Counted from the stretch's first letter, positions 1,606 through 62,518 are shown. The stretch is DNA of 64,000 nt from Diadema antillarum (GCF_040938485.1 NW_027271324.1:682001-746000); one strand, 5' to 3'. Made by a program: numbers and translations. Notes: a model not told the origin generated them from the sequence alone.

Positions 1606-2605
1606 CATTACAATTTCTAAAGTGACATCTTCCATACGCAGAGCGCGTTTTGAAAAAGCACTCATCTGAGTGCATAGACAGGTATAGGGCTAATACACGC
1701 AAAGTCTAGTTCATGAGCCCAAAGCTGCGCAGTAATATCTCGGGAAGTAAAAGTAACTCATCAAAATGGAAATGTAGGTCGTACACAAGGAGTAGATGCA
1801 GAAATTTTACATTTCTGTACACATTTTACATAGGTACCTTTTGAGTTGAAAATTAGCTGTTTTTCACCTTAGGATTCAGTACTCCGCATAAGGACACACA
1901 TTTTCGCGCGTTATATGAACGGCGCGGTGCGCGCGAACAGGCAGGGAGAGGTCCCATCAGAATGACCTACTTCGAGACGTAAAAGAACCACTATTCCTGT
2001 CGCACAACCAAAAAGTAACTCCTTAAAATGAATAATCATATTCTAATGAATATTCATGTAAAATATCTAGCCAATTGGAAAAACTTTCCCATAGGTACCT
2101 CTGCAATATTCATATTCCTTAGCTGCTGACGGAATCTGCCTCTGATACACTGTATTTAACGCGTGCCGCACTTTAGGATACCGCATTCTGATTGGCTAAT
2201 AGGTTTTCGGGCAATCGGTCACCGCGTGATCATTTCATTAATATTCATCACTACTCACGCCACTGGATCGCTGTGATTGGCTTCATGTAAATGAACCTCA
2301 GGGCCGGTATTCAAATCCATACTTAAGTCAAATACTTATACTTAAATCAAGTATTTTACTTAAGAAAAGTAATTTGTTTAAAAATGCGATTCAGTTCCCG
2401 CTAAGTATTATACTTGGCTAAGACAGATTTTGTCGCAATTTTATTACTTAAGTATTTTACTTAAAGTAATAAAATTGCAGAGTGACGTCATTCATGTTAA
2501 GTATTATACTTAAGATAAGAAATGCTCGTAGGTTACTTAAGATAAGAAATGCTGGTAGGTTGTTTGCCACTTGGCTATTGGATTTGAGCTGGGGAAGACG
2601 TGGCC

Positions 2606-5600
2606 ATGGCAGCTCTTCTCCATCTCCATGAGAACTACCAATTGGGAAGGGAGAGAATACTAGTACACAGACGACTTCATCCGTTGCAAATCTACAATGA
2701 CGTTGAATTAATCAAGCGCTACAGATTCAACGGGGAGGGTATCCACTACATTACTAATCTTATCCGACACGACATCACACCGAAAGGAAATAACAACCAT
2801 CCTATTGACCCAATAGACAAAGTTTGCATAGCCCTTCATGTTTTAGCCACTGGATGTTTCCAGAGAACAGACGGAGACACGCTTGGAATCTCTCAGGCGT
2901 CTGTTTCACGGATTGTCCAGACAGTCTGCACGGCACTTACCGACAGGTTACCACACTTTGTTCGCCTTCCTCAAGGACATGAGCAAGTTGAGAACATGAT
3001 GAAGTTTTACCAGATAGCAAGGTTTCCTGGCGTGATCGGGTTGATCGACGGAACTCATGTCAAGATACAAGCACCAAGTGAGGATGAGCACCAATTTGTT
3101 AATCGCAAACGTTTTCACAGCATCAACGTTCAGGTAGTGGTAGACGCAGATGCAAAGATCATCAATCTGAATGCACAATGGCCAGGAAGTGTTCATGATT
3201 CGAGGTAATAAAAATCATCTATCTTTCAAATTTAATTAATCATTGTGATTCGATTTTGTTTAAAACATGTGTCACTGTGGTATATGGGACATTCTCACAT
3301 AGAGTGTTAGTTCAATTTCAGTCAGAGTGAAACCCCAAAATCAGCAACAAAATATTGAGTCAAAACTTGTCTTCATATACGTGCATAAACAATAATAGAT
3401 GCCGGGTATTCAAAAAAAAAAAAAAAAAAAGGACAGTAAATTCTCAACGCATTAAGGGCATTAACAATGTAACATTGGCACGTAATTGTGAACACAGTGC
3501 TCTATGAAACCATAAAACAGATACGTTACCGAAATTTATAACTGATTAACTCCATAATATTTGTAGTTTGAACCAGATGTTACTAAAGAGTAAGGCATTC
3601 CATACTTGCACTTTTCGCTGTATTGATTGATGAGTTAACTCTAAATAGTTATAATTTCTTAGTGGAAAAGTAAGCAAAGAAAATGGGATTCCATCGGGAG
3701 TCGAACCCGAGACCTCCGGATTGCTAGACCGGTGCTCTACCGACTGAGCTATAGAAAGCCTATAGTAGTTATAATTTCCAAACATTTTATTATATCCACG
3801 CCAAANNNNNNNNNNNNNNNNNNNNNNNNNNNNNNNNNNNNNNNNNNNNNNNNNNNNNNNNNNNNNNNNNNNNNNNNNNNNNNNNNNNNNNNNNNNNNNN
3901 NNNNNNNNNNNNNNNNNNNNNNNNNNNNNNNNNNNNNNNNNNNNNNNNNNNNNNNNNNNNNNNGGCGGGCGGTGGTTGGTCCGTTGCAAAATCTCGCGTC
4001 GCGAAGTCCTACAGTTTTGAATCAATGTAAATGAAAGTTTAGAGGAAATTATGATATTGAGGAATATATGTGTAAGATAGGATTTTTGTGTTCGTCTGTA
4101 AATGCGTTGCCATGGTAACCACTTGCATTTATTCCACAATATTCAAGCAATTAAGAACAAAATTAGTATCTATGTTAATCTATAGGTGAACTTATGCAAG
4201 ACACCCTTTGTACTAGTATTTTAACTTGACAAAGCGTTGTCACGGTAACCGCACGTTTCCTTCAAAAATCCTGTGAACTAGTTCCACAGTTTTGAAGCAA
4301 CTGAAATCAAAATTGGTAGGCATTATGGTCTTGAGGAATAGATGTGGATCTTTTTTTTTTCCAGCCAAGGCATTGGCATGGTAAAAACTATTTTACCAAA
4401 ACCTTGCAGATCGAATAACTTCAACATCATTAAATCACTTAAGTTCAACTTCAGTATGTACGATGATCTATATGTATATAGTTATACAATACACCAATGT
4501 GTATGTGATAGTATGAGATATATGTATGTTGATAGTATGAGATATATGTATGTTGCTATGGTAACCACTCATTTTTTGTATGAAGATAAAGCATTTAAGC
4601 GATGAAGGTCAAATTTGGTGTATATGATGCTCTTTAAGAGTAATTGCCTAAAATGTCCTTTGGGATTGCAAGCGGACAATGCGTTGCCATGGTAAATACT
4701 TATTTTGGTATATCCACCTCATTGCCGCCCTAACGATACCACATGCTCTGAACAAACACTGGTCAGGAGGTGGGGGTATTAATCACTTTCAGAAATAATT
4801 TTAGTTTCATTTGATTTAATACAATTATACTCAGTAAAATTGTACACTCTTCTGCTACCTACATACGAAAATGGAATGATAACTGTTGTGTAAGTAAAAA
4901 GTAATTATCGATCAAAAGTGTCATTTTTTTTTTATCTACACCAAATACCCCCATTCCCCAAATCAGCAACTGGTTGGGGAAACGTATTTTCAGTTTTTGA
5001 AAGCTTACGCTGATTATGGCCATAGTTTATATCCATAAAAAAAAAACAACAAACAAAAAACATTTTCTGATTTATTGATTTAGCAGACGTAATCAACTTT
5101 TTTTTTTCTTCTTGAGAGGAGTGTAAAATTAATTGATAAGTCGAAAATTATTCATTTTAGGGTGCTTCGCGAGAGTGGACTACAGGAGGTACTGCAGGAC
5201 AGTGAAGGACACCTCCTAGGAGACAGTGGCTATCCTCTCAAGTGCTGGCTTCTTACTCCAATCGCTCGTCCATCGGATGATGCAGAAGAAAGGTATAAAT
5301 TCCATAAAACCACACTCACGAAGAATAATTGCATTAATTTGAGGTTTCATAAAAAGTTAGGTATCTTGAGAAGCTTGTAAAATCGAAGTTTAGTCAAAAT
5401 TGGACTCATTGGAGCAAAGTTATGCCAGTTTTCAAAGCGTTACGGACGGACGGACGTTCAACAAATGGCACGCAAAATTTGAGTGGACAGGGACATGAGC
5501 AACTACCCACAAGTGCAATTTAAGAATGACTATCCCCATTATGTTTAAATGCATTTTTATGCCTGTCCAAGTGGTAATCCGACATAATATGCTCCGGCGA

Positions 5601-26589: not shown

Positions 26590-28770
26590 CTACATTTGAC
26601 AAGTAGCACTATTATGGCCAGCATATTTGCCACACTTTCCACACTTGTAGGATTTTCGTGGAAGTTTTATGCCTTTGTGTGCACGGTAGAGGCGTCTATT
26701 GCTCCTTCGCATGATCTGGACTAGTGACTCAACTCCTCTTCGATGATTAGTACCTCTAAAGTATTCCGTTGTTGTCATGTCATTTAATTTTTCTAGTCCC
26801 TGAGCATTGAATATGTGGATAGAACCTAGCCTTTCTATGATATCAGCGGCATGTACTACAAAGAGATGCATGTAGGGGGTTGCTATCTTCGAAGTGCAAG
26901 CATCTACCAGGTTGTCATACCACTCAACCAAGTCATTTCTCAACTTTGTCAATTTGGCAGGCCTGTCAGGAGACATGGCCTCAGCCTTCTTGAATGATCG
27001 AACATCGTCATACAGAACCCTAAACCTGCGCCATGCATTTACCACTACATGTCCGTGTGCATGAGAGTCAACAAGCTTTTCTATGTCATCCAAGACTTTC
27101 TCAACTTTTTGTTTTTCTGGTCCTCTCAGATCCCGGCATTTGACCATTTTGGCATCTTTGTCATAAGCCAGAGGAGCACCACGCACACCTGCTTTCTTCA
27201 AGATGTCTTCCATCTTAGCGCATCTTTTCATTTTTTCAGGAGCATAACACCTACTCACTGATCCAATTTCTTGCAAGTCAAGCTCGTTGATCATCTGAAT
27301 AATCTTCTTCAGTAACCTGTCTGTGATTCTAAGATACATGTGCAACGTATCAAAAACTACGTTCTCCGTTCCGATCGACTTGAATATAGGATCTCGTACA
27401 CAGGAATATCCCTTTTCACCGATTCTCCTGGGCTGTTTTGGAGCTGTAACATGCAAATGTTGACTATCAATCAGGCAGTAGATACACGGATATTTGGAAT
27501 TGGCCGCTCCCATTCCACAGATGGTTAGAAGAAACTTGTAATCTCCTGATAAATGATATCGAATAGTGTACTCCAACTCGTCAATGACAACACTTGTGAA
27601 GGAAGCTACATCCTGCACTATATCCACCAAGTGTTCTTTCAACTGACTGTATTTCTCTTCATCGCAAAGTATCGCTATGGGATGATGTACACTTGCGGAA
27701 GTTGCATTGGCTTCATCGTTTAGAATTGTACATGTGACATTCACGTAATGCCAATGGCCTACCACTGTGCCATCTCCAGTTATCTTCACATCTACGTTCT
27801 GCTTACCTTTTCCAAGTATGCCCTTGTCTACAAGACATTCAATTTCTTTTTTCAAAAGTACCTTTATATCTCTTTGAACTCCTGGGTTAGACGACTTGGT
27901 TTTGGACAAAGGGATATCCATTTCGCATTCAGTGATTGTCATGTGGCTTTTTACTTTTTTGAGATTCGGGATATTGCTGATACACGCAAGTGCATTCCAA
28001 GACTCATCTGAGATGCCATGAGCATCCTTTACTAGCACGGCGAGATTTACCCTTTGTAAAATGTCCTCTTCATTACATCCTGTCATGCTACACAACTCTT
28101 CTGTATCTTCAATCAGAGAAATATCCTTCAGTTCTCCACTGTTTGTGTCTGTTACAGTGATATGTATGACACGAACTCCCCACGAATCAAGAAATTGCAA
28201 CCTGGCCCGACACTCTTCTTTGAGATGCATTGAGAGTCTCCTGGCATGTCTCCTTGAGTAATGTTCTTTTCTCATCCATGCTGATCGCTTGCCTGATTGT
28301 CTATTTCTCAGTAACATAGAGAGATGCAGAGCACGTTTCTTGTACTTTTTCCTGATCAATTCAAGGCGTTCATTCTTTTTCAAAGCTTTTTCAAGCTTCT
28401 GTTTTATGTCTGTCAACTTCTCATTTTTTCTTTTCAGTTTCTTTATGGTATCAAGCAGACTTTTTTGCGGACATTCTGACTGCAAAATTTTAAGCTGCCA
28501 TGTCTTTGTCTTTTTAAGCCACTTACTGAACAGAGCTCGCTGCTTCCCTCCACGTCGTGACTGCTTTATTCGAGAAAAAAGTCCTTTAGGTCTGATTAGA
28601 TACGATTTTATTGCATTCAGTAGACGAGGAGTTGAAGAAATATTCATAGAATAATGTTGACATATAGAAGAAAACACAATGTTTGAAACCTGTTGTGGAC
28701 CCTTATGCATATGTAACTTTGTAACTTCAGTAACAAAAGCCAAATCTACATTTAAAAAAAAGTATGCCAT
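26590..28770 (-). CDS. RAG1-core/Transib-related DDE transposase, 726 aa, intronless, intact
   Basis: Motifs align by eye with RAG1 core: VKITGDG (vs VKESCDG, D600); GDYKFL..GMGAANSKYPCIYC (vs GYDEKL..GLEASGSVYICTLC, D708 plus CxxC); FDTLH (vs IDALH); TPYMHLFVVHAADIIERLGSIHIFNAQGLEKLND (vs [33 protein letters not shown], HxxxxH plus E962). Also an N-terminal basic coiled coil and a C-terminal CxxC..GHN...C knuckle. Confidence 0.85.
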   Translation of the reverse strand: MAYFFLNVDLAFVTEVTKLHMHKGPQQVSNIVFSSICQHYSMNISSTPRLLNAIKSYLIRPKGLFSRIKQSRRGGKQRALFSKWLKKTKTWQLKILQSECPQKSLLDTIKKLKRKNEKLTDIKQKLEKALKKNERLELIRKKYKKRALHLSMLLRNRQSGKRSAWMRKEHYSRRHARRLSMHLKEECRARLQFLDSWGVRVIHITVTDTNSGELKDISLIEDTEELCSMTGCNEEDILQRVNLAVLVKDAHGISDESWNALACISNIPNLKKVKSHMTITECEMDIPLSKTKSSNPGVQRDIKVLLKKEIECLVDKGILGKGKQNVDVKITGDGTVVGHWHYVNVTCTILNDEANATSASVHHPIAILCDEEKYSQLKEHLVDIVQDVASFTSVVIDELEYTIRYHLSGDYKFLLTICGMGAANSKYPCIYCLIDSQHLHVTAPKQPRRIGEKGYSCVRDPIFKSIGTENVVFDTLHMYLRITDRLLKKIIQMINELDLQEIGSVSRCYAPEKMKRCAKMEDILKKAGVRGAPLAYDKDAKMVKCRDLRGPEKQKVEKVLDDIEKLVDSHAHGHVVVNAWRRFRVLYDDVRSFKKAEAMSPDRPAKLTKLRNDLVEWYDNLVDACTSKIATPYMHLFVVHAADIIERLGSIHIFNAQGLEKLNDMTTTEYFRGTNHRRGVESLVQIMRRSNRRLYRAHKGIKLPRKSYKCGKCGKYAGHNSATCQM

Positions 28771-28904
28771 AGTTCATGAATGAATCAAACTGCATAAAAA
28801 ATATGGAAATGACGTGTGAGTGTAAAATGTCTCAATAACTTTGAAACTAAGAAACTGTAAAACTCTTAAACAACCCTGAAACAAAACGTTGTTGTGTCTT
28901 GACT

Positions 28905-31875
28905 TCATTTCTGTTGTTTCCACTCTTCTCGAGTTCCATACGACCTTATGAACCTCAACATCAGATAGTGCCCTCTCTCCAGGTGATGTTCTTGCAGGGT
29001 ACCACTACGTTCCACAAATTCGGTAATTGGTCTCATTTTCCTGAGCTTTAGGTAAAGGCCCTTTTCTTTCACGTATGCGAAATCCCCTGCCATATTGGTT
29101 ATTCTTACGTTCCAGTCGGGTCCGAGGATGGCATTCAGCTCATTCATTAGGTTACGGTCTTGAGTATTTTTACAAAGTGCAAATACTTCCTCGAACACCA
29201 GTGGATCTACAGGGACACGTGCCACGCACTCCGGATTCTGGTTTATGCTGATTGTAAGTTTTTCCTTTATGGCAAGCCTGAGCGCAGTCTTGACATCACT
29301 TGCTGTTCCGCAGCTGCCTGAAAAATCTTCTTTGGTGATGAGATCCGCCTGAAATTAAAAGTCAAGTTCATACAATCTCTCTGTAAATCAAAGATGATAA
29401 TACTAAGCACCCATCATTTATTAGAGAAGTGGTAAGTATACACACGAAGGATAAGTAGGTAGAAAGGAATCATGTACAATGTATAACTGAATTATAACAA
29501 TGGCTTTATCCCTTCGGCAGTTTAATGTTAAACATGGGTTACATGATTAGGAATATACGTTTTCCTGTTCAATTTCGTATTAGTGCATGGAAGAGTATAG
29601 AGAGTCATTCAATTTCGATATAGGGCAACAAAAAAAAAATTCATAATGGGCATTCAGTTTCACATTAGAGCAATCTACAGAGTAAAAACATTATTTAGAT
29701 TCCATATACCATAGGGCATTCAAGTAAGCACGAAAAGACACGTGACTGAAGATTCCTGATAGATTATTTGAATTATGTTACACAATTAAGAACAAGCATC
29801 TCTACCAATTATACATGTTGATTCCTGGTGACGTGCAATACCGCATACATCTCATTTTATTGCGTTACTTGTTCATCTTCACATTGTATACAATGTATGA
29901 CAAATTTTCTAACATTTTTGTCAATCATATCATTTCCTCAAATCTAAGCTTCCCCCTAAAAACAAAAATATAAATATAAACAACCCTCCAGATATATAAG
30001 GTGACATCATTTGTCAAACGCAAGTCAGCTAAACTAAATTCTACAATTGACAGTGGAATTTAACTTCCCAAGAGCTTTTGGAGCATAGGACTTTTTTAGG
30101 GACTTTGTACAACACATTCACAGTGCCTTCATTTTCCAAGAGATGGACAGCATTTCTGACATAGGAATTCTCTTCTATGCTGGTATTGTATATAATTATG
30201 AAGAAGTGATCAGCTCTGGGAAGACAACATTGCAGTATCTATTGTACGTTCCTGTTAGTTGAACTGATTTGTGTTTGGCAAATGATGTCCTCTCCAGACT
30301 GTGCTCTGGAGTATTTTTTATCTTTATTTGAGCTTAGGTTTGAGAAAATGAAAAAAATGTTTGAAAATCTATTCAAGTACATGTGAAGATGAATAAGTAG
30401 CACAATAAAATGAGATGTATGCAGCATCCATGCACATCAGCAGGAGTCAACAGGCATTTGGCTTTCCATTGACCATAGTTTAAATTTTGGAAAATACATC
30501 TTACCTTTTCCAGCCACTGATCCCACTGATCCCCCCATCCGGTATAGTGAACTAAAACCGTGTGATCATCTTCCTCCAGAATCTTTCATGTAAAAATAAA
30601 CAGAGCATCAATAATTAATTGTAAGAACTAGAGTTTCTATGATAAGTTATCAAATGAAATGATGAAAACGATTTTCTAGAATGAGATGAACAATCTAGAC
30701 AATATACTTAATAAGCTATCACCTTGTGCTATAAGTATAGTATAATACTCACGGAAATAAGAAAAAAGCTACCCACGCACTACTGTCTCTAAAGTGTTCG
30801 ATATTATTTTTTTACTGGGACTTTTATTAAATACTGCTGTGCTTCAGTGCTTTAATATGGTTGACAGTTATTAAACACTAACGTCAGATTTACAGTCGAT
30901 GAAAATGAAAATGAAATGATGAAAAAAAAAATTAATCCAATTTTTTCCATTTTTTCCCCCGGGTCGGGGGGAGGGGGGGGGGGGGAGACAGGAAGTAACC
31001 ATGGTGTTACGATTACGTGGTCGAGGACGTGATGCGTTTCATGAAACGGTAAACTTTTTGTCAGTGATATACACTGACAACTGTTGAAAGCTACTGAAAT
31101 CCTTGCGTCTGATTGGCTGATAGCAAATTTGTCGGTGAAAACCTCCGACGAACTTGTTGATGAAACGCCCCCCAGATGGGCGCTCATATCACCCGCCTTC
31201 CTGACAACATGGTCCATGTTGGGGGACCTAATTTACACCCTAAGCCTGAGGCCTGCTCCCGAGACTGTAACTTGGCTAGAACAATTGAGGGACGTTATTT
31301 AACTGCCGCTGAATACGCAAGAAAAAGGCTCATTCGTGTTAATTACCGCTCACTGACCCTGGTGGACCGGGTTACGGTTGGTGCTGTTACTACGTTAATA
31401 CTACGTACTACTAGTTACTATAGCTAGTACACTACAGACTAGAGTGTATACCTTACAGTAAGTGTTACCTTACAGTAAGTGTAAGTGTATACCTTACAGT
31501 ATACCTTACTGTTAGTGTTACTGACTGTTTTTACTAGTGACTGTTTGATGAATGCATAAATAGTTTTGACTTTTACTAGTTTAATCCCCTCTATAAATTA
31601 CACTAGTTTGATTCGTTATATTCTACATCGGCGCTAACAGTTACATGAGACAATACTTAAACATGCTTCAAAATATTAGAATGATGTTTAGTAGAGTTTA
31701 ACGTTAGGCCTACCTCGACATCAAATGCTGACTTTTTGTTCCACTGGCACTGCAGTTGTTTTCTCCTGGGTCTCCGCGGTAGGCCTAATTCTGGAAGTTC
31801 TTGAAGTTTTTTGAAATGTCCGATGCAATATGAAGCACATCTTCTCCTTGGTCTTTGGGTTGGGTGTTCATTCAT
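28905..31875 (-). CDS. Chromo-barrel (Tudor-knot) domain protein with uncharacterised C-terminal domain, 3 exons, about 227 aa
   Basis: Exons 31875-31714 (donor GAG|GTAGGC), 30582-30505 (AAG acceptor, donor AAG|GTAAGA) and 29348-28905 (TTTTAATTTCAG acceptor), all phase 0. They join to ...AFDVE-ILEEDDHTVLVHYTGWGDQWDQWLEK-ADLIT.... VHYxGWxxxWDxW is the MRG15/MOF/Esa1 chromo-barrel signature. The true start may lie upstream. Confidence 0.72.
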
Positions 31876-35321: not shown

Positions 35322-36434
35322 ATGGATCCTGACTGCGTAGACAGTTTTAATCTTACCATCGATGAAATTCCAAGCATGATATATGGACCGGGTCATACCT
35401 TTTATATCACTGCCTTCTTACCTCTCCTCATGGTAATAGGCGTGCTTGGTAATCTGGCGTTTATCTATGTCGTGATCAAAATTCCCCGGATGAGAACTTG
35501 CACGAACTGCTACCTCCTAAATCTGGCGATATCTGATATCATCTTTCTGCTGATGGCTATCGGTGAGAAAATTTGGCGATATGCAATGTCTCCGATACTT
35601 GATGATGATAATCCTATGGGACGAGGTGGTTGCATCTGGGTCTTTCTACTCTCTGATGCGGCCTACATAGCTTCCTTGTTTTTCATCACCTTCGTATCTG
35701 TAGAGCGGTATTGTGCCGTTTGCCGTCCCCAGAAAAAGAGCGAGACTAGTCAGTTCACGAAAACGGCTATCTTCACATCGGCTTCGTGGATCATATCGGC
35801 CATCGTGGCCGCAGCCTTAACTCCCTCCAATTTCATGTTTAATAAGTACTGCCTCCAATGGCCACCGGGACAGCAATTTGCAGACTACCCGACAACGTTC
35901 GCGTTCTGTCATCCCCTTCACGAATGGATAGCCGCCTACGCGCTGGGTATGCAAACGATACCATTCTTCATCTCCTTAGTCGTTAACATACTGCTGTATA
36001 TCGCAATAATACGTGGCTTAAACAGATCGATCGAACGATTGCGCATACACGGCGGTACCAAGGATAATGATACGAAAATGCGCGATCAAGTAGCACGTAT
36101 GCTGGTCATTAATGGTGCATTTTTCTTCTGTTCGTTGGCACCATTCGAGTTTGTCTCTGCCTTGAATATGGTTGCGAGAATGTCGGGAGAAAATTACTTT
36201 GGCTCCGCAACGGCCAAAGAAGTGCTGTCTTACGTGGGAAGATCATTGTCATACATTAATGCGGTCATCAACCCCATTATTTACACTGTAATGAGTAACC
36301 GTTACAGAGAGGCGTTCAAGCAGGCATTTCACATAGGCATGTCACGCTCATCGAAACGACTCATTTCGGGAAAATCCACAACTCAAGCCACCACCCAGGA
36401 ATACCTCAAAGTCAATCAAGACACGCGAATGTAA
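35322..36434 (+). CDS. Class A (rhodopsin-like) GPCR, TRH-receptor/neuropeptide-receptor-like, intronless, 370 aa
   Basis: Seven hydrophobic segments. GN in TM1, MRTCTNCYLLNLAISD (TRHR-like MRTPTNCYL), ERY in TM3, W in TM4, CxxP in TM6, NAVINPIIY in TM7. The ligand cannot be assigned. Confidence 0.92.
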   Translation: MDPDCVDSFNLTIDEIPSMIYGPGHTFYITAFLPLLMVIGVLGNLAFIYVVIKIPRMRTCTNCYLLNLAISDIIFLLMAIGEKIWRYAMSPILDDDNPMGRGGCIWVFLLSDAAYIASLFFITFVSVERYCAVCRPQKKSETSQFTKTAIFTSASWIISAIVAAALTPSNFMFNKYCLQWPPGQQFADYPTTFAFCHPLHEWIAAYALGMQTIPFFISLVVNILLYIAIIRGLNRSIERLRIHGGTKDNDTKMRDQVARMLVINGAFFFCSLAPFEFVSALNMVARMSGENYFGSATAKEVLSYVGRSLSYINAVINPIIYTVMSNRYREAFKQAFHIGMSRSSKRLISGKSTTQATTQEYLKVNQDTRM

Positions 36435-57524: not shown

Positions 57525-60500
57525 TTAGATATCTAAATACGTGGTTGAGACATTATCATCAAGTACTTTTCGTTTGGGGTAAAAATATGTAAAGGCATTT
57601 CTTGCCTGTGAGTAAGTAGAGACACCATTGCCAACTACACGAAAGCCAGTATTCACACCACCAGCAGCCACTCTAGATCGCAGAACCTTCAGATACACAT
57701 CTTTCGTTATGTCATTCTGTTTCTTACTGATACCTTTACAACTGAACTTGTCTTTCCCACCGAAGCAATAATACGTTTTACTACAAAGTGCCACGATACC
57801 ATCACCCTCCCACTCAACTTTGAAGAGTCCCGGAGTGCGCTTATCGTATTTTGCATTTTCTGCTGTATCATTGCGGGGAAACCAGTTACATTTGTCCATC
57901 TCATACTCTTTTCTCAGGTGTGGTTTAATGAGATCATCAATGGAATAAGCAGAAATGGCCATGTATGCGGAATCTGTATCCATCTCACATAGTTGAAAAT
58001 CGGATGGGTCAATATATTTCACAAGGAAATCGTAATAAAATTCGAGCATACGCAGTTTTGCCAACTGGTACACTGCATGCCCGATTTGTACCGGAAGATC
58101 CATTCTTATCTTCTGTTTAGCCATCTCCACCTCGTAACAGTTTTCTGATATTGGGTTCAAATCTCTGTAGAGGATATTGTTGATGTGTTTTTCAGCTTTA
58201 CGTTCATCGCAAATTTTGACATTCCGATGTTTTAGTTTGTTTGTGATTGTCTTGCCGTAAGACGAGTTACCAATCAGCTTCATGGTATCGGCGATGATGC
58301 TCTTGGATGGGTCTACATCTCCTGCGCGCCGTGCATTTGACACATTCTCACCAAAACTCTTGAAACAAGGCTTTGGTTCATACTCCACACACTGAGAGAT
58401 TTTGGTAACTACTAGGCCATGCTGCAGATACCATATGAGCAGGGGAGTAAACAGCAAGATATTCTCACCAAACATACTACCGATGAGACTACGACGAGGA
58501 GTCTTCATGATTCCATGCTCCTCTGCGTATGACTTCATCACATCTCCAATATCATCCCTACTGATACTAATATTTTTGAAAATGGGGCACATCTCCGAAA
58601 AGTACTGTTTGAGATGGTCGGGGACATGGATATCGCATTGGACAAAACCAAACAATGTTCCAGCCGAAATGGCAGATAAAAGTTGAGGTTGTGTCATGCC
58701 ATTACGGAACTTTGGGGGTGGAAATTTTTTGGAAAGAAATGCGCTTAATTCGGAATCATATTTGCGCAAATTCTTGTATTCACACTCCCAGATAGAAATG
58801 TATTCATAACCAAGACTTTCTATGTATTGCTGTTTCTTCCGGGTTTTCTTCATTAAATCTTCCATTGATGTCCCTAACGTTTTGTTGTGTGATTGGCCCT
58901 TTGTGAGGTGGCAAGGGTGCCCGTGAAAATAACAACCATGAAATTCAAAAACTTGATTGGTTGTTGAACAGAACCCATCTACCGGAAGCTGGAGTGGTCC
59001 TAGCTTTTTCTCGGTATGATTCCCAGCGTGACGAATGGGTATACCTCTACAATATCCCTCGTAATCTAACCATTCCTGTGCTATGGGGTGTCTGTTTTCT
59101 GGCCTAAAATCATTCTCTAATCTCCTCCTAATATAGTGACCAGTGGGCATATGCTGCATAATGGAATACAGATATAAAGCATTCGCATCGAAGCCGATTA
59201 TTTTCTGACAAGGTTTCCCACCGCGAATTTTGGTCACGTGCTTCTCATGGTAACGATGAAATATGATAGATGGTCCCCCTACTAGGTTGTCACGAAAAGT
59301 GTAGTACAAGTCTTTGTCTTTATCCGAAATTAAACTGAAATGGGCATCTGGATTACATTTCATGAGGTATTTCATTGTAAGACCGGGTACTGATATGCCG
59401 TCTTTGAATAGATCAATAGTCAGACCCTTGTAGAACTCTCGCATTTTCTCAATTGCCTCGATAAATGGTGTAACGTCTAGGTTATTATACCATACCAGAT
59501 AATCTCTAAGACAAGTCATCTTATTTTCTTCCCATACACGCTTGCAATAGTGGTACTGTTCATCCGAAAAGCGGGTGCCCTTAAGATTGTCTTTAAAAGC
59601 CTCGATAGTGGGTAGTTCAGTTAGGTTTAATTTATCGAGTGAATCAACCCAACCGTGGGGAAAGTATCCTTTACTTTCTTCGCAATCGTATGCTTTGAGG
59701 AATGCTGCGTATGAAAAGCCGGGAGCGAGAAAATTTGTTATGTCAAGAAACTGGAGGTTGTTAGTTTTAACGGCCATATGGTTATGATTCCTCTTGATGA
59801 CATAACTGACAGGGTCCTTTTGCAAGAGGGAAGGATAGAGATATTGTTTGATTACATTTATATCGTACCTCCCCGAATTAAATCCTACTACGGGGAGTTC
59901 CGACAGATAGTTCAGAAATTTATCCATCAATTTAGTAAGATGTTTAGGTTCCTTACATTTTTGGTCCCCTGATTCACTGAGGCGCTTTGTAACTTCGGCC
60001 AATTTCTTTTGCAACAAATCAATGACATCAGAGTATGTGGATCTCAGTAAAGAGAAGGAGCGTTGGCTAACCTCTAACAAGTATGTGACCATACCATCGA
60101 TCAGTTTTTGCGGATCTCCATCTGACACGAGGCAAAATGGAGTGGTATAATCAGGGACGTTAGAATTGACACTAACACTCATAGGAATGTGTCTGGAAGT
60201 GTACTGTAATTTACCGGCCGCAACATCTTGGCAACTTTCTATTTTTTCCAAGTATGATTCCATATCAAATGTAGCGAAATATGGAAAATACTTGCGTTCT
60301 TCATCCACCTCAATACCTTCATCTGCTAGGTCTTCCCAGATACTTGGCGAATTATGAAAAGTTGCCCTCCCTTTATTTGGAAAGATGTACGCGGTTCCCG
60401 ATGCATCACAAATGGTCTCGTGGCGATGTAGTGACTTTCGCGTTTTCCAAAGCTTGTGACATTTTCTGCACTGGAAACTTTGGCAGTAGCGTTCAATATC

Positions 60501-61462
60501 AGTAATGTAGCTAAAATGATTGCCGTAGAGATTTACGTACATAGTATCATCATACTTTCCTAAACTACGTCGTACAAGCTTAGCTACAATTTGACCTTCA
60601 TTTGACACTTCCTCGTCAGACTCACCTTCAACATACTCATCATCGATAGATATGCCACTAAAATTCTCTTTTTCATCGGATGTGTTAGCAGTTTCCAATT
60701 CATATACAGATATGTTGATTTCAAACTGATCTTCAACCTCCCCCAATTCACCCAGTCTCACCCCTTCAAATTCTTTAATGGATACATCTGGTCTGTATTT
60801 CCAAAGCAATGCCTTAGTAGCTGATTCTAGCTTTTTACGATTACAACCCATATTTAATGCAATACACCTGAATAAGCATAGATTATCATCGTAGAAGCAT
60901 CCAGTTTTCAGATTTTTACACAATGATATAACTGCGTTATTGTCTTTGATGTATGATGGGAGATCGTTACCTTTGCCTATTGGGTGATCTACCAGCCGAG
61001 ATATGTAAAATGTGACATTGGTGACATGCTGAACCACCCACTTGGAATTGGGGCGAAGGGAACGAGCATATTCTAGTGTGTCTTCATGCAAGAGAGCATC
61101 AACGAATGCCTGGAAAGATACCTGATCCCTAACCAAAAACGGCTCATTGAACAATTTGGTGTTTCTACTGGCATAATAATATCTACATTCATTTGTTTCA
61201 TTGTTTAATAGAACGAAACCAAAAGATGTGTTAACCTTAAATGTACAACACTGTTGATTAAATACTGACTCAGCCTTTTGCTTAAGTGTTTCGTTGTTAA
61301 GACTTGGTATATGGAAGTTGTACCACCGGTAGATTCTAGCTTGCGTTGACTGCCGATCCCGAATCTCATTCCAGTGTTGTTTGTACATCTGCCCCAGACA
61401 GCCTTCTGGATCCACGTGAGGAGGAAGATCCACCGCTGTAATATTGTGTTGAGAATTTCTCT
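57525..61462 (-). CDS. polB: Protein-primed family B DNA polymerase (Polinton-type pPolB), main exon
   Basis: 1302-aa uninterrupted ORF. ExoI FATFDMESY, ExoII GFNSGRYD, ExoIII YNNLDV, motif A GFDANALY, motif B KLIGNSSYGK, motif C MDTDS, C-terminal PGLFKVE..SKTY..KGI. OTU-like DNLCLFRC...GNHFSY, and a Vsr-like nuclease insert VDG..VFEFHGCYFHGH..IWECE. AATAAA on the minus strand at 57316-57321. Confidence 0.95.
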
Positions 61463-62046
61463 CTAAAAAGACGCAAATAGAGGAATGTATGAGAGATTTT
61501 ATGCAATTTCAATACATTGCAATTTGAATACAGATTCCCAAATTAAGTGTGCATGCACTTTGACCTTTGCTAAATACTATTTGTGATTTTGTATACGAAA
61601 CAGATTAATGCTGATTCTGACTAATATTGCTAAATACTCTACAGCAGAATCCCTGTTCTTCAGCTTCATTCAATAATGTACAGTTTGCCTTAATAGCGAA
61701 CTTACCTTTGTGTTTAGCCTAATCGTGTAGTAGGTGGAGAATAACCTCCATACTGTATTCAATCGTGAATAAATCATATAGATCGTATAGTATGAATTAA
61801 TTGTAGTTTATGATACTTAATTTTGAATTTGTTTACAGCTACTGCATGGGTTTTGACACCAAGTCGACGAATGGAATGGTTACAGTTGTAAAAAAAAAGT
61901 TACAGATATATAATACTGGAGTATTTAATCTAAATTCAATTAAACTTGTTATTTGAAAGGTAAATCCAAACATTTTATGACAATTCGCAATCGTGTTATT
62001 TCATAATACAAAAGAGGTTAACATGTTATTGCATGTTTGTACTTAC

Positions 62047-62518
62047 TCGTGGATATATGAGGTGTTTCATTCTGTGACTTTCGTTTTCGTGAAGTTGTTG
62101 AAGGGATTTGTCTATGACTGTCCAAGTGTTTCAAGTACTTCTTTCTCTGGTCAAAGACTCGGCCGCAAGTATGGCACACAAAAGTTTGAATGCAAGTATG
62201 GCAGCTTGATTTGTGCTTTTGAAGGTCTCCTTGTGACAAAAACAATGCGTTGCATTCGTTACACTGGAAACGTTGATCATCACTGTCCTCTGTGAGTACT
62301 GATGGCTGGTCTTGAGCGCTCTTGGCAGCACTGTGAAATTTCTTCCTGTGTTGCTTAAGATTGTCGAACCTCTTGAAAGTTGTACCACATGTATCACACA
62401 CGTATAGGATTTGCTGACCATGAGACATACGTTTATGACGCATCATATTTGATTTAGAGGAAAATTTCCCCGCACAAATTTCGCACGTAAACTTGTCATC
62501 ATCATTATCAGGATCCAT
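62047..62518 (-). CDS. Four-C2H2 zinc-finger exon, probably 5' exon of the pPolB gene (predicted fusion 1469 aa)
   Basis: CEIC..H..H, CDTC..H..H, CNEC..H..C/H and CHTC..H..H. Donor ACG A|GTAAGT at 62047/62046 and acceptor CTTTTTAG|AG at 61463/61462 are phase-compatible (A+AG = Lys). Confidence 0.8.

What the first reader, a model, noticed from the sequence alone, without database searches (positions are those of the whole stretch)
26590..31875. RAG1/Transib-like transposase paired with a chromo-barrel (histone-reader-type) gene instead of RAG2
Seen: an intact 726-aa ORF keeps the equivalents of RAG1 D600/D708/E962 and the CxxC/HxxxxH zinc ligands, including the near-verbatim stretch IIERLGSI vs RAG1 IIERDGSI. 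Only 134 bp upstream, on the same strand, ends a 3-exon gene whose middle exon (invisible in the ORF track) encodes VLVHYTGWGDQWDQWL. Established: RAG2 and RAG2L supply a methyl-histone-reading PHD finger, Transib elements carry a transposase only, and MRG15/MOF-type chromo barrels read methyl-lysine or nucleic acid. Inference: a two-gene RAG1-superfamily transposon that independently recruited a different chromatin-reader partner, possibly for target-site choice. This is the best candidate for an undescribed system in the window.
Basis: partly seen in the sequence, partly recalled or inferred. Interest (0 to 1): 0.85.

Follow-up and report, generated by a model that had tools for sequence, protein, structure and literature searches.

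The report
RAG1-fold transposase with chromo-reader partner gene
This sea-urchin locus is one copy of a widespread, apparently undescribed two-gene jumping-gene family in marine invertebrates, in which a cutting enzyme built like the immune recombinase RAG1 is always accompanied by a small protein with a histone-reader-type domain where RAG2 would be.

Summary
The intact 726-aa ORF (26590-28770, minus) belongs to a family of over 1500 representatives. Its profile hits RAG1 in the PDB (E=5e-8), and its AlphaFold model (pLDDT 89.7) matches RAG1, amphioxus RAGL and HzTransib. D333, D410, C429, C432 and H635 are invariant, H640 and E660 nearly so, with RAG1 spacing.

The upstream three-exon gene is real. 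All splice sites are GT-AG, and intron 1 lies at the same position in a sea cucumber homologue. Its family profile hits MBT and chromo-barrel readers (L3MBTL3 2e-9, MRG15 5e-5). A conserved C-terminal domain of about 130 aa matches nothing.

The two genes are adjacent in 10 of 11 external loci (sea cucumber, scallop, unidentified organisms), whichever gene I started from. In one relative, both genes lie in a 5.05-kb unit with 13-bp CA...TG inverted ends, found 100% identical at two sites.

The window's copy looks like an old, fixed insertion: no inverted ends, single-copy depth, and a 98-99% identical counterpart in a related species that carries a stop and frameshifts.

No paper in the held library describes this pairing. 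The scan had noted this stretch only as this same finding. The partner's function is inferred, not shown.

The parts
26590..28770 (-). Intact 726-aa RAG1-fold DDE transposase gene, single exon. Coiled-coil N-terminal region, D333/D410/E660 triad, C429-x2-C432 and H635-x4-H640 zinc ligands, C-terminal CCHC-type knuckle.
28771..28904 (-). 134-bp spacer between the partner's stop codon and the transposase ATG. It holds no AATAAA or ATTAAA signal. A small contig from an RNA run lies on 28814-28877.
28905..29348 (-). Partner gene exon 3 (147 codons plus stop). It encodes the conserved C-terminal domain (GDFAYV...PI.EF...) of unknown fold.
29349..30504 (-). Partner intron 2 (GT...AG). It contains a MITE-like inverted-repeat element at 29838-30427.
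30505..30582 (-). Partner exon 2 (26 codons). It encodes the core of the chromo-like barrel, VLVHYTGWGDQWDQWL.
30583..31713 (-). Partner intron 1 (GT...AG), at the same position and phase as the intron of the Holothuria homologue. It contains a very high-copy repeat at about 31000-31200.
31714..31875 (-). Partner exon 1 (54 codons). A basic N-terminal tail and the first barrel strands (...LQCQWNKKSAFDVE). The true 5' end of the gene is not established.

Best explanation
The locus is one copy of an ancient two-gene DNA transposon lineage of the RAG1/Transib/Chapaev (CMCT) clade, found in echinoderms and molluscs and probably in cnidarians. Gene 1 encodes a RAG1-fold DDE transposase. By homology it should cut and paste DNA with the D-D-E triad, supported by the CxxC/HxxxxH zinc site (inferred from fold and residues). 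Gene 2 encodes a separate protein of about 230 aa. It has a basic tail, an N-terminal chromo/MBT/chromo-barrel-type domain with aromatic residues at the cage positions, and a conserved C-terminal domain of unknown fold. I propose that gene 2 is an obligate accessory subunit, functionally analogous to RAG2. The C-terminal domain would dock on the transposase, and the reader domain would tether or license the complex on methylated nucleosomes, biasing where or when the element cuts and integrates (inferred). The window's own copy is most likely an old, fixed, no longer mobile insertion whose two reading frames are still open in this species.
For: Transposase. The exhaustive search found 1541 relatives. 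D333, D410, C429, C432 and H635 are invariant, and H640 and E660 nearly so. The family profile hits RAG1 at 5e-8 and BbRAG1L at 2e-5, aligning the D708/CxxC block and the HxxxxH...E962 block. The model has pLDDT 89.7. Foldseek gives RAG1 1.7e-15, BbRAGL 6e-12 and HzTransib 3e-10.

Partner. Exon 2 hits MSL3_chromo-like at E=0.0019. The family profile hits L3MBTL3 MBT at 2e-9, MRG15 at 5e-5, and Eaf3, MOF, MSL3 and CDYL. Seven of 18 members hit Tudor-knot and 6 hit MBT. Aromatic residues are conserved at LYD, HY, GY/GW and DEW.

Linkage. The two genes are adjacent in L001, L004, L002 and L003, in L005, L006 and L007 reached from the partner side, and in L009, L010 and L011.

Mobility as a unit. 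L002 and L003 share a 100% identical 5055-bp block in different flanks, with 13-bp CATATGAAACTTT inverted ends. Copies L008 and L009 are 98.5% identical.

Window copy. No TIRs were found. Contig depth is uniform with the flanks, and a related species holds the locus at 98-99% identity.
Against: No experiment or structure shows that the partner binds histones or the transposase. Reader-domain E-values are modest, and single members stay below Pfam thresholds. Co-divergence of the two genes is only weakly positive (Mantel r=0.36, p=0.065). The target-site duplication of the mobile relative is not clean. The window's copy has no detectable ends and is single-copy, so for this copy 'transposon' is an inference from its relatives. 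L008 has the transposase without the partner within 6 kb. Repbase reports on Chapaev elements could not be consulted, so an earlier description cannot be excluded.
Confidence: 0.7

Rival explanations
1. The accessory protein is needed, but not as a histone reader. It could act like the Myb-like second protein of PIF/Harbinger elements (nuclear import, binding to transposon ends) or as a dosage regulator or inhibitor of transposition. The chromo-like domain would then bind nucleic acid or another protein.
For: The basic N-terminal tail (RPKR...) and the well conserved C-terminal domain of unknown fold carry much of the conservation. Some chromo-barrel domains are classed as RNA-binding, as the Pfam name Tudor-knot indicates. 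Atlas features of the C-terminal domain point weakly to MBD-associated, DNA-related clusters.
Against: Aromatic residues at the positions aligned to MBT and chromo cage residues are conserved across very divergent members. That would be unexpected if the pocket were unused.
Confidence: 0.3
2. In this sea urchin the pair is no longer a transposon but a domesticated host gene pair kept for a cellular function.
For: Contig depth is single-copy and a related species holds the whole locus at 98-99% identity. No TIRs are present. Both reading frames are intact. Between the two species the ORF shows 12 synonymous against 15 non-synonymous changes, where about 21% synonymous is expected by chance, giving dN/dS of about 0.3. 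An in-frame 6-nt indel polymorphism lies in exon 2.
Against: The related species' copy carries a nonsense change at codon 695 and two frameshifting insertions in the ORF. At 1-2% divergence an ORF can stay open by chance. No expression of the partner was seen.
Confidence: 0.15
3. The adjacency is coincidental: a RAG1-like element landed beside an unrelated host chromo-domain gene.
For: The window's copy alone shows no element boundaries that enclose both genes.
Against: The same two families are adjacent in 10 of 11 external loci from at least two other phyla, in both search directions. Both lie inside one TIR-bounded mobile unit in L002, L003 and L009.
Confidence: 0.02

Closest known systems
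RAGL transposons (ProtoRAG; RAG1L + RAG2L) and vertebrate RAG1/RAG2
   Same: The catalytic subunit has the RAG1 fold, with the same D-D-E and CxxC/HxxxxH layout and spacing. A second, separately encoded small subunit travels in the same element. In the unidentified (ENA) loci the two genes are convergent, as described for RAGL (PMC7204232). The second subunit carries a domain type that reads histone methyl-lysine, as the RAG2 PHD finger does (established knowledge).
   Different: The partner is about 230 aa with a chromo/MBT-type domain and an unknown C-terminal domain. It has no kelch propeller and no PHD finger. The transposase lacks the N-terminal zinc (NZD/RING) region: it has 3 Cys in its first 200 residues and no zinc-finger Pfam hit there. 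In echinoderm and mollusc loci the genes are in tandem with a 50-200 bp spacer. Termini are CATATG..., not CAC...; the TSD is unresolved.
Chapaev / Chapaev3 transposons (DUF1280-type transposases; CMC or Transib superfamily, depending on the author)
   Same: This is the nearest named sequence neighbourhood. The best Atlas cluster carries DUF1280 (score 0.92, 199 shared features). Two of 40 relatives and P0002 hit DUF1280 weakly. They share the C2C/H4H motifs, and the termini are CA...TG as in the CMCT clade (PMC12730594).
   Different: There is no N-terminal Chapa zinc domain. Termini are CAT...ATG rather than the 'invariable' CAC...GTG (PMC4079192). The papers read describe Chapaev elements with a transposase only. 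The window protein itself does not hit DUF1280.
Canonical Transib (e.g. HzTransib)
   Same: Same fold (Foldseek 3e-10), DDE triad plus zinc ligands.
   Different: The family profile does not detect HzTransib by sequence at E<=10, although it detects RAG1 at 5e-8.
Chromoviruses (LTR retrotransposons with an integrase chromodomain) and fungal CMCT/KDZ DNA transposons carrying TET/JBP genes
   Same: These are mobile elements that carry a chromatin or epigenetic module. Chromoviruses use a chromodomain to tether integration to marked chromatin (established knowledge). Fungal DNA transposons repeatedly captured an epigenetic accessory gene (PMC12730594).
   Different: Here the module is a separate gene in a cut-and-paste DDE transposon of the RAG1 fold, not a domain fused to a retroviral-type integrase and not an enzyme.

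Membership tests
RAG1/Transib-fold DDE transposases (CMCT clade) | RNase H-fold catalytic D-D-E triad | tested here: met
   D333 and D410 are invariant and E660 is at least 90% conserved in 40 sequences. D410 aligns to the RAG1 DEK aspartate and E660 to the E of ...EGNES....
RAG1/Transib-fold DDE transposases (CMCT clade) | [quoted passage not shown] | tested here: met
   C429 and C432 are invariant; H635 is invariant and H640 at least 90% conserved. The H-to-E spacing is 25 residues, which by my numbering of mouse RAG1 from memory equals H937-E962. The HMM alignment places H635, H640 and E660 on the H...H...E of RAG1.
RAG1/Transib-fold DDE transposases (CMCT clade) | Overall fold like the RAG1 core | tested here: met
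   The model (pLDDT 89.7) matches RAG1 at 1.7e-15 with TM up to 0.64 by target, BbRAGL at 6e-12 and HzTransib at 3e-10.
RAG1/Transib-fold DDE transposases (CMCT clade) | Terminal inverted repeats CA...TG and a short (2-5 bp) TSD | tested here: inconclusive
   The related L002-type element has 13-bp CATATGAAACTTT TIRs, but the TSD is ambiguous. No TIRs were found for the window's copy.
RAGL transposon (RAG1L + RAG2L) | Partner is a RAG2-like kelch propeller, usually with a PHD finger | tested here: not met
   The partner is about 230 aa with no kelch or PHD hit. Its profile hits MBT and chromo-barrel domains only.
RAGL transposon (RAG1L + RAG2L) | RAG1L N-terminal zinc domain (NZD), with or without RING | tested here: not met
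   The N-terminal 200 residues hold 3 Cys and have no zinc-finger Pfam hit. They are predicted helical or coiled-coil.
Chapaev transposons | Transposase matches DUF1280 (PF06918) | tested here: inconclusive
   The window protein gives no hit. Two of 40 relatives hit (best 3e-7), and P0002 hits weakly. The top Atlas cluster carries DUF1280.
Chapaev transposons | N-terminal Chapa zinc domain | tested here: not met
   No Cys/His-rich N-terminal region is present.
Chapaev transposons | CAC...GTG termini and a 3-4 bp TSD (TWA in Chapaev3) | tested here: not met
   The mobile relative ends CAT...ATG, and no 3-4 bp or TWA duplication is seen in L002, L003 or L009. The window's copy is not testable.
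Royal-family methyl-lysine readers (chromo / chromo-barrel / MBT / Tudor) | Sequence-profile homology to the domain | tested here: met
   Profile A2 hits L3MBTL3 at 2e-9, L3MBTL1 at 3e-7, MRG15 at 5e-5, and Eaf3, MOF, Esa1, MSL3, ARID4A and CDYL. Exon 2 alone hits MSL3_chromo-like at 0.0019.
Royal-family methyl-lysine readers (chromo / chromo-barrel / MBT / Tudor) | Aromatic cage residues | tested here: inconclusive
   Aromatics are conserved at LYD, HY, GY/GW and xYD and align with the F..W...Y of the MBT repeats. Which residues form the cage is taken from memory of MBT and HP1 structures. No 3D model of the partner was available.
Royal-family methyl-lysine readers (chromo / chromo-barrel / MBT / Tudor) | Binding of methylated histone peptides | not testable with these tools
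   This needs peptide arrays or ITC.

The most novel reading that the evidence does not exclude
A RAG1-fold transposase lineage, distinct from RAGL, independently acquired its own separately encoded histone-reader subunit and has kept it across Cnidaria, Echinodermata and Mollusca. Coupling of RAG1-type DNA cleavage to chromatin marks would then have evolved at least twice. That would make 'catalytic RAG1-fold subunit plus reader subunit' a recurrent design rather than a peculiarity of the V(D)J recombinase lineage.
Probability: 0.35. Interest if true: 0.85.

Novelty: new variant of a known kind. Interest (0 to 1): 0.72.

Why it matters
RAG1/RAG2 is the textbook case of a domesticated two-subunit transposase, and why RAG1 needs a histone-reading partner is a central question in the origin of V(D)J recombination. 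A second, unrelated reader-type partner attached to a RAG1-fold transposase would provide a natural comparison. It would make testable whether chromatin-coupled cleavage is a general requirement or advantage of this fold. It also points to a tractable element, the 5-kb L002-type unit with identical copies, for transposition assays with and without the partner. Finally, it gives a function-linked context to two sizeable families of unnamed invertebrate proteins.

Tried and rejected
- Single-sequence Pfam and PDB searches of the ORF gave nothing.
- The word-index homologue search was blank.
- The single-sequence AlphaFold model was useless, with pLDDT 37.
- Searches for TIRs around the window's copy found only chance-level matches. 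The L002-type terminal motif is not present near the locus.
- TSD of the mobile relative: 5-bp matches exist (ATCTC in L003, AGGCG in L002) but at inconsistent offsets, and L009 has none, so I left it open.
- RNA support for splicing: no joints and no partner-exon coverage in the one RNA run. The other runs are DNA-like contigs.
- A fusion of partner and transposase was rejected. No partner domain occurs in 150 transposase homologues. An in-frame stop lies just upstream of the ATG, and the acceptor-like site at 28790 gives a dead frame (reading).
- The co-divergence test was not significant.
- The C-terminal domain of the partner had no PDB or Pfam match and only weak Atlas leads to MBD-associated clusters.
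- One context look-up failed (P0024) and one returned no DNA (P0169).
Full report
**Observation.** The 726-aa ORF lies at 26590-28770 on the minus strand and is uninterrupted. Exon 2 (30582-30505) is bounded by AG and GT and encodes ILEEDDHTVLVHYTGWGDQWDQWLEK. Exon 1 (31875-31714) ends ...LQCQWNKKSAFDVE|GT. Exon 3 (29348-28905) follows a TTTCAG acceptor. The three exons join in frame to a 227-aa product. The stop codon ends at 28905, which leaves 134 bp before the transposase ATG.

**The large ORF is a RAG1-fold transposase.**
- On its own it hits nothing in Pfam or among PDB sequences, and the word-index search was blank.
- The exhaustive HMMER search found 1541 representatives at E<=0.001. 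The best full-length relative is 35% identical.
- In a 40-sequence alignment D333, D410, K412, C429, C432, R448, D474, H477 and H635 are invariant. H640 and E660 are at least 90% conserved.
- The profile of that alignment hits only RAG1 and RAG1L among solved structures: 3jbw at 5e-8 and amphioxus 6b40 at 2e-5. It aligns the ...GDxK...YxCxxC block and the ...TPYxHxxxxH...QGLEKLN block to the RAG1 D708/C727/C730 and H937/H942/E962 regions.
- With the alignment as input, AlphaFold gave a confident model (pLDDT 89.7, pTM 0.71). Foldseek matched it to RAG1 core structures (1.7e-15, 570-660 aligned columns), BbRAGL (6e-12) and HzTransib (3e-10), ahead of any other transposase.
- Within the clade it is not a clean member of any named family. 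Of the 40 relatives, 5 hit Pfam RAG1 weakly, 2 hit DUF1280 and 1 hits DUF1258.
- The nearest Atlas and AlphaFold DB clusters are uncharacterised eukaryotic proteins, some carrying DUF1280. A protein named 'Zinc finger PHD-type domain-containing' ranks 24th and vertebrate RAG1 25th in AlphaFold DB.
- DUF1280 has been equated with Chapaev transposases (PMC3985635). Chapaev has been placed inside the Transib superfamily (PMC4411706) or in the CMC/CMCT clade, which shares the C2C and H3-4H motifs and CA...TG ends (PMC12730594).
- The protein lacks the N-terminal Chapa/NZD zinc domain of Chapaev and RAG1L. It has a long coiled coil instead, and a CCHC-type knuckle at its C-terminus.

**The partner protein.**
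- Exon 2 alone hits MSL3_chromo-like (E=0.0019).
- A single-exon homologue, found next to a related transposase, retrieved 16 and then 102 relatives of 190-260 aa. None has a Pfam domain or an informative name. The two named ones are 'hypothetical' or 'uncharacterized' proteins of Paramuricea clavata and Actinia tenebrosa.
- The family profile hits the MBT repeats of L3MBTL3 and L3MBTL1 (2e-9 to 4e-7) and the chromo barrels of MRG15 (5e-5), MRG701, Eaf3, MOF/Esa1, MSL3 and ARID4A. More weakly it hits CDYL chromodomains. All matches fall on profile positions of about 30-100.
- Seven of 18 members hit Tudor-knot and six hit MBT, below threshold.
- Aromatic residues are conserved at LYD, HY, GY/GW, xYD and DEW. 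From my memory of MBT and HP1 structures, these positions form the methyl-lysine cage.
- The C-terminal part of about 130 aa (IKxKL...DPxV...LGxxWxxRIxNxxGDFAYV...PIxEF...FVRGDGN) is at least as well conserved and matches nothing. Atlas features give only weak leads to MBD-associated clusters.

**Linkage.** This is the decisive result.
- Starting from transposase homologues, a partner homologue lies beside the gene in these loci:
  - Holothuria leucospilota L001: upstream, same strand, with the stop about 200 bp before the ORF.
  - A second Holothuria paralogue, L010: about 50 bp upstream.
  - Argopecten irradians L004: an annotated 238-aa multi-exon gene that ends 104 bp upstream.
  - A Logan contig, L011: upstream, same strand.
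  - Contigs of unidentified organisms, L002, L003 and L009: downstream and convergent.
- Starting from diverged partner homologues, a RAG1-like gene lies beside them in L005 (frameshifted), L006 (internally deleted) and L007 (separated by an LTR retrotransposon insertion).
- The only negative locus, L008, is a copy that loses similarity about 240 bp after the transposase stop codon.
- No transposase homologue carries the partner as a fused domain.
- Pairwise divergences of the two genes are positively but not significantly correlated (Mantel r=0.36, p=0.065). The lineages are nearly star-like, at 25-45% identity.

**Mobility as a unit.**
- L002 and L003 share a 5055-bp block at 100% identity in unrelated flanks. 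L009 is 98.5% identical over the whole length, and L008 over its left 3.9 kb.
- The block contains both genes and ends in a 13-bp inverted repeat, CATATGAAACTTT...AAAGTTTCATATG.
- The ends are CA...TG, as in the CMCT clade, but not the CAC...GTG reported for Chapaev (PMC4079192).
- Five-bp flank matches exist in L003 and L002 at inconsistent offsets and none in L009, so the TSD is unresolved.

**The window's own copy.**
- No inverted repeat brackets the two genes.
- Contigs from runs of the same species cover the whole stretch at the same depth as its flanks. The only high-copy piece is a repeat at 31000-31200 in intron 1.
- Contigs from a related species cover the locus, introns included, at about 98-99% identity.
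- Relative to the window, that species has 12 synonymous and 15 non-synonymous changes in the ORF, where about 21% synonymous would be expected by chance. It also has a nonsense change at codon 695 and insertions of 1 and 4 nt in the 5' part of the ORF.
- Other individuals of the window's species carry an in-frame 6-nt insertion in exon 2.
- An RNA run labelled 'echinoderm metagenome' yields small contigs on the transposase ORF and the spacer, but none on partner exons and no splice joints. Expression of the partner is therefore unproven.
- The exon 1/2 junction is supported comparatively. The Holothuria gene has a phase-0 GT...AG intron at exactly the same place (...ELFDVD|IIEETD... against ...AFDVE|ILEEDD...).
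- I read this copy as an old, fixed insertion that is probably immobile. Domestication is possible but not favoured, given the damaged counterpart in the related species.

**Mechanism.** By homology the transposase should perform DDE-catalysed cut-and-paste transposition (inferred). The partner is best explained as an accessory subunit. Its retention over deep divergence, in two different gene orientations and inside the mobile unit, argues that it is needed for propagation. Its only recognisable module is of a type that reads methyl-lysine. I therefore favour tethering or licensing of the transposase on marked chromatin, by analogy with the RAG2 PHD finger reading H3K4me3 and with chromovirus integrases. 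The unknown C-terminal domain would be the docking surface. A Harbinger-like role (import or end binding) or a regulatory role is a serious rival.

**Prior knowledge.** Eight full-text searches and nine papers read gave no description of a RAG1/Transib/Chapaev-type element with a chromo, Tudor or MBT partner. The Repbase Reports on Chapaev are not in the library, so priority cannot be excluded. The scan's own notes list this stretch only as this same finding. They also list other RAG1-like relics elsewhere in the genome, which I did not examine.

**Verdict.** This is a new variant of a known kind: a two-gene DDE transposon of the RAG1-fold clade with a different, reader-type second gene. Interest is high for the evolution of RAG. 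It is tempered by the untested function and by the relic state of this particular copy.

Noticed in passing
window 29838-30427: A MITE-like element inside partner intron 2. It has 47-nt terminal inverted repeats (89% complementary) and a second nested inverted pair at 30003-30289.
   Followed up: no
window 31000-31200: A very high-copy repeat in partner intron 1. Summed contig depth is about 22,000 in the same species and about 100,000 in the related species, against about 80 for the flanks.
   Followed up: no
window 30559 (exon 2): Contigs of two runs of the same species carry a 6-nt in-frame insertion (plus-strand CTGTGA) relative to the window. It adds two residues inside the barrel exon. 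The related species lacks it.
   Followed up: partly
window 26686, 28460, 28709: The related species' copy of the transposase ORF has a nonsense change at codon 695 and insertions of 1 nt and 4 nt near the 5' end, so that copy appears broken. The 1-nt insertion lies in a T-run and could be an assembly error.
   Followed up: partly
window 28771-28904: The 134-bp spacer between the two genes has no AATAAA or ATTAAA signal, and an RNA-run contig lies on it. The tandem loci in sea cucumber and scallop have similarly short spacers (50-200 bp). The two genes may share a transcript. Untested.
   Followed up: no
window 2600-3208 (+): A partial PIF/Harbinger-type transposase ORF (DDE_Tnp_4, E=2.8e-14).
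   Followed up: partly
window 35322-36434 (+): An intronless 370-aa rhodopsin-family GPCR ORF (7tm_1, E=2.7e-33). It is probably the nearest ordinary host gene.
   Followed up: partly
window 57525-61433 (-) and 62018-62518 (-): A 1302-aa ORF with no Pfam hit at E<=0.001. By eye it has family-B DNA polymerase-like motifs (DTDS, KxxxNSxYG), possibly from a Polinton-like element. A 166-aa C2H2 zinc-finger ORF lies next to it.
   Followed up: partly
L001 9589-9663: A short duplicate (80% identity over 25 aa) of the partner's C-terminal end lies between the partner gene and the transposase ORF in Holothuria.
   Followed up: no
L006 11343-12312: An internally deleted transposase: residues of about 26-261 are joined to about 652-755, next to an intact partner gene. 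It is a candidate non-autonomous derivative that keeps the partner.
   Followed up: no
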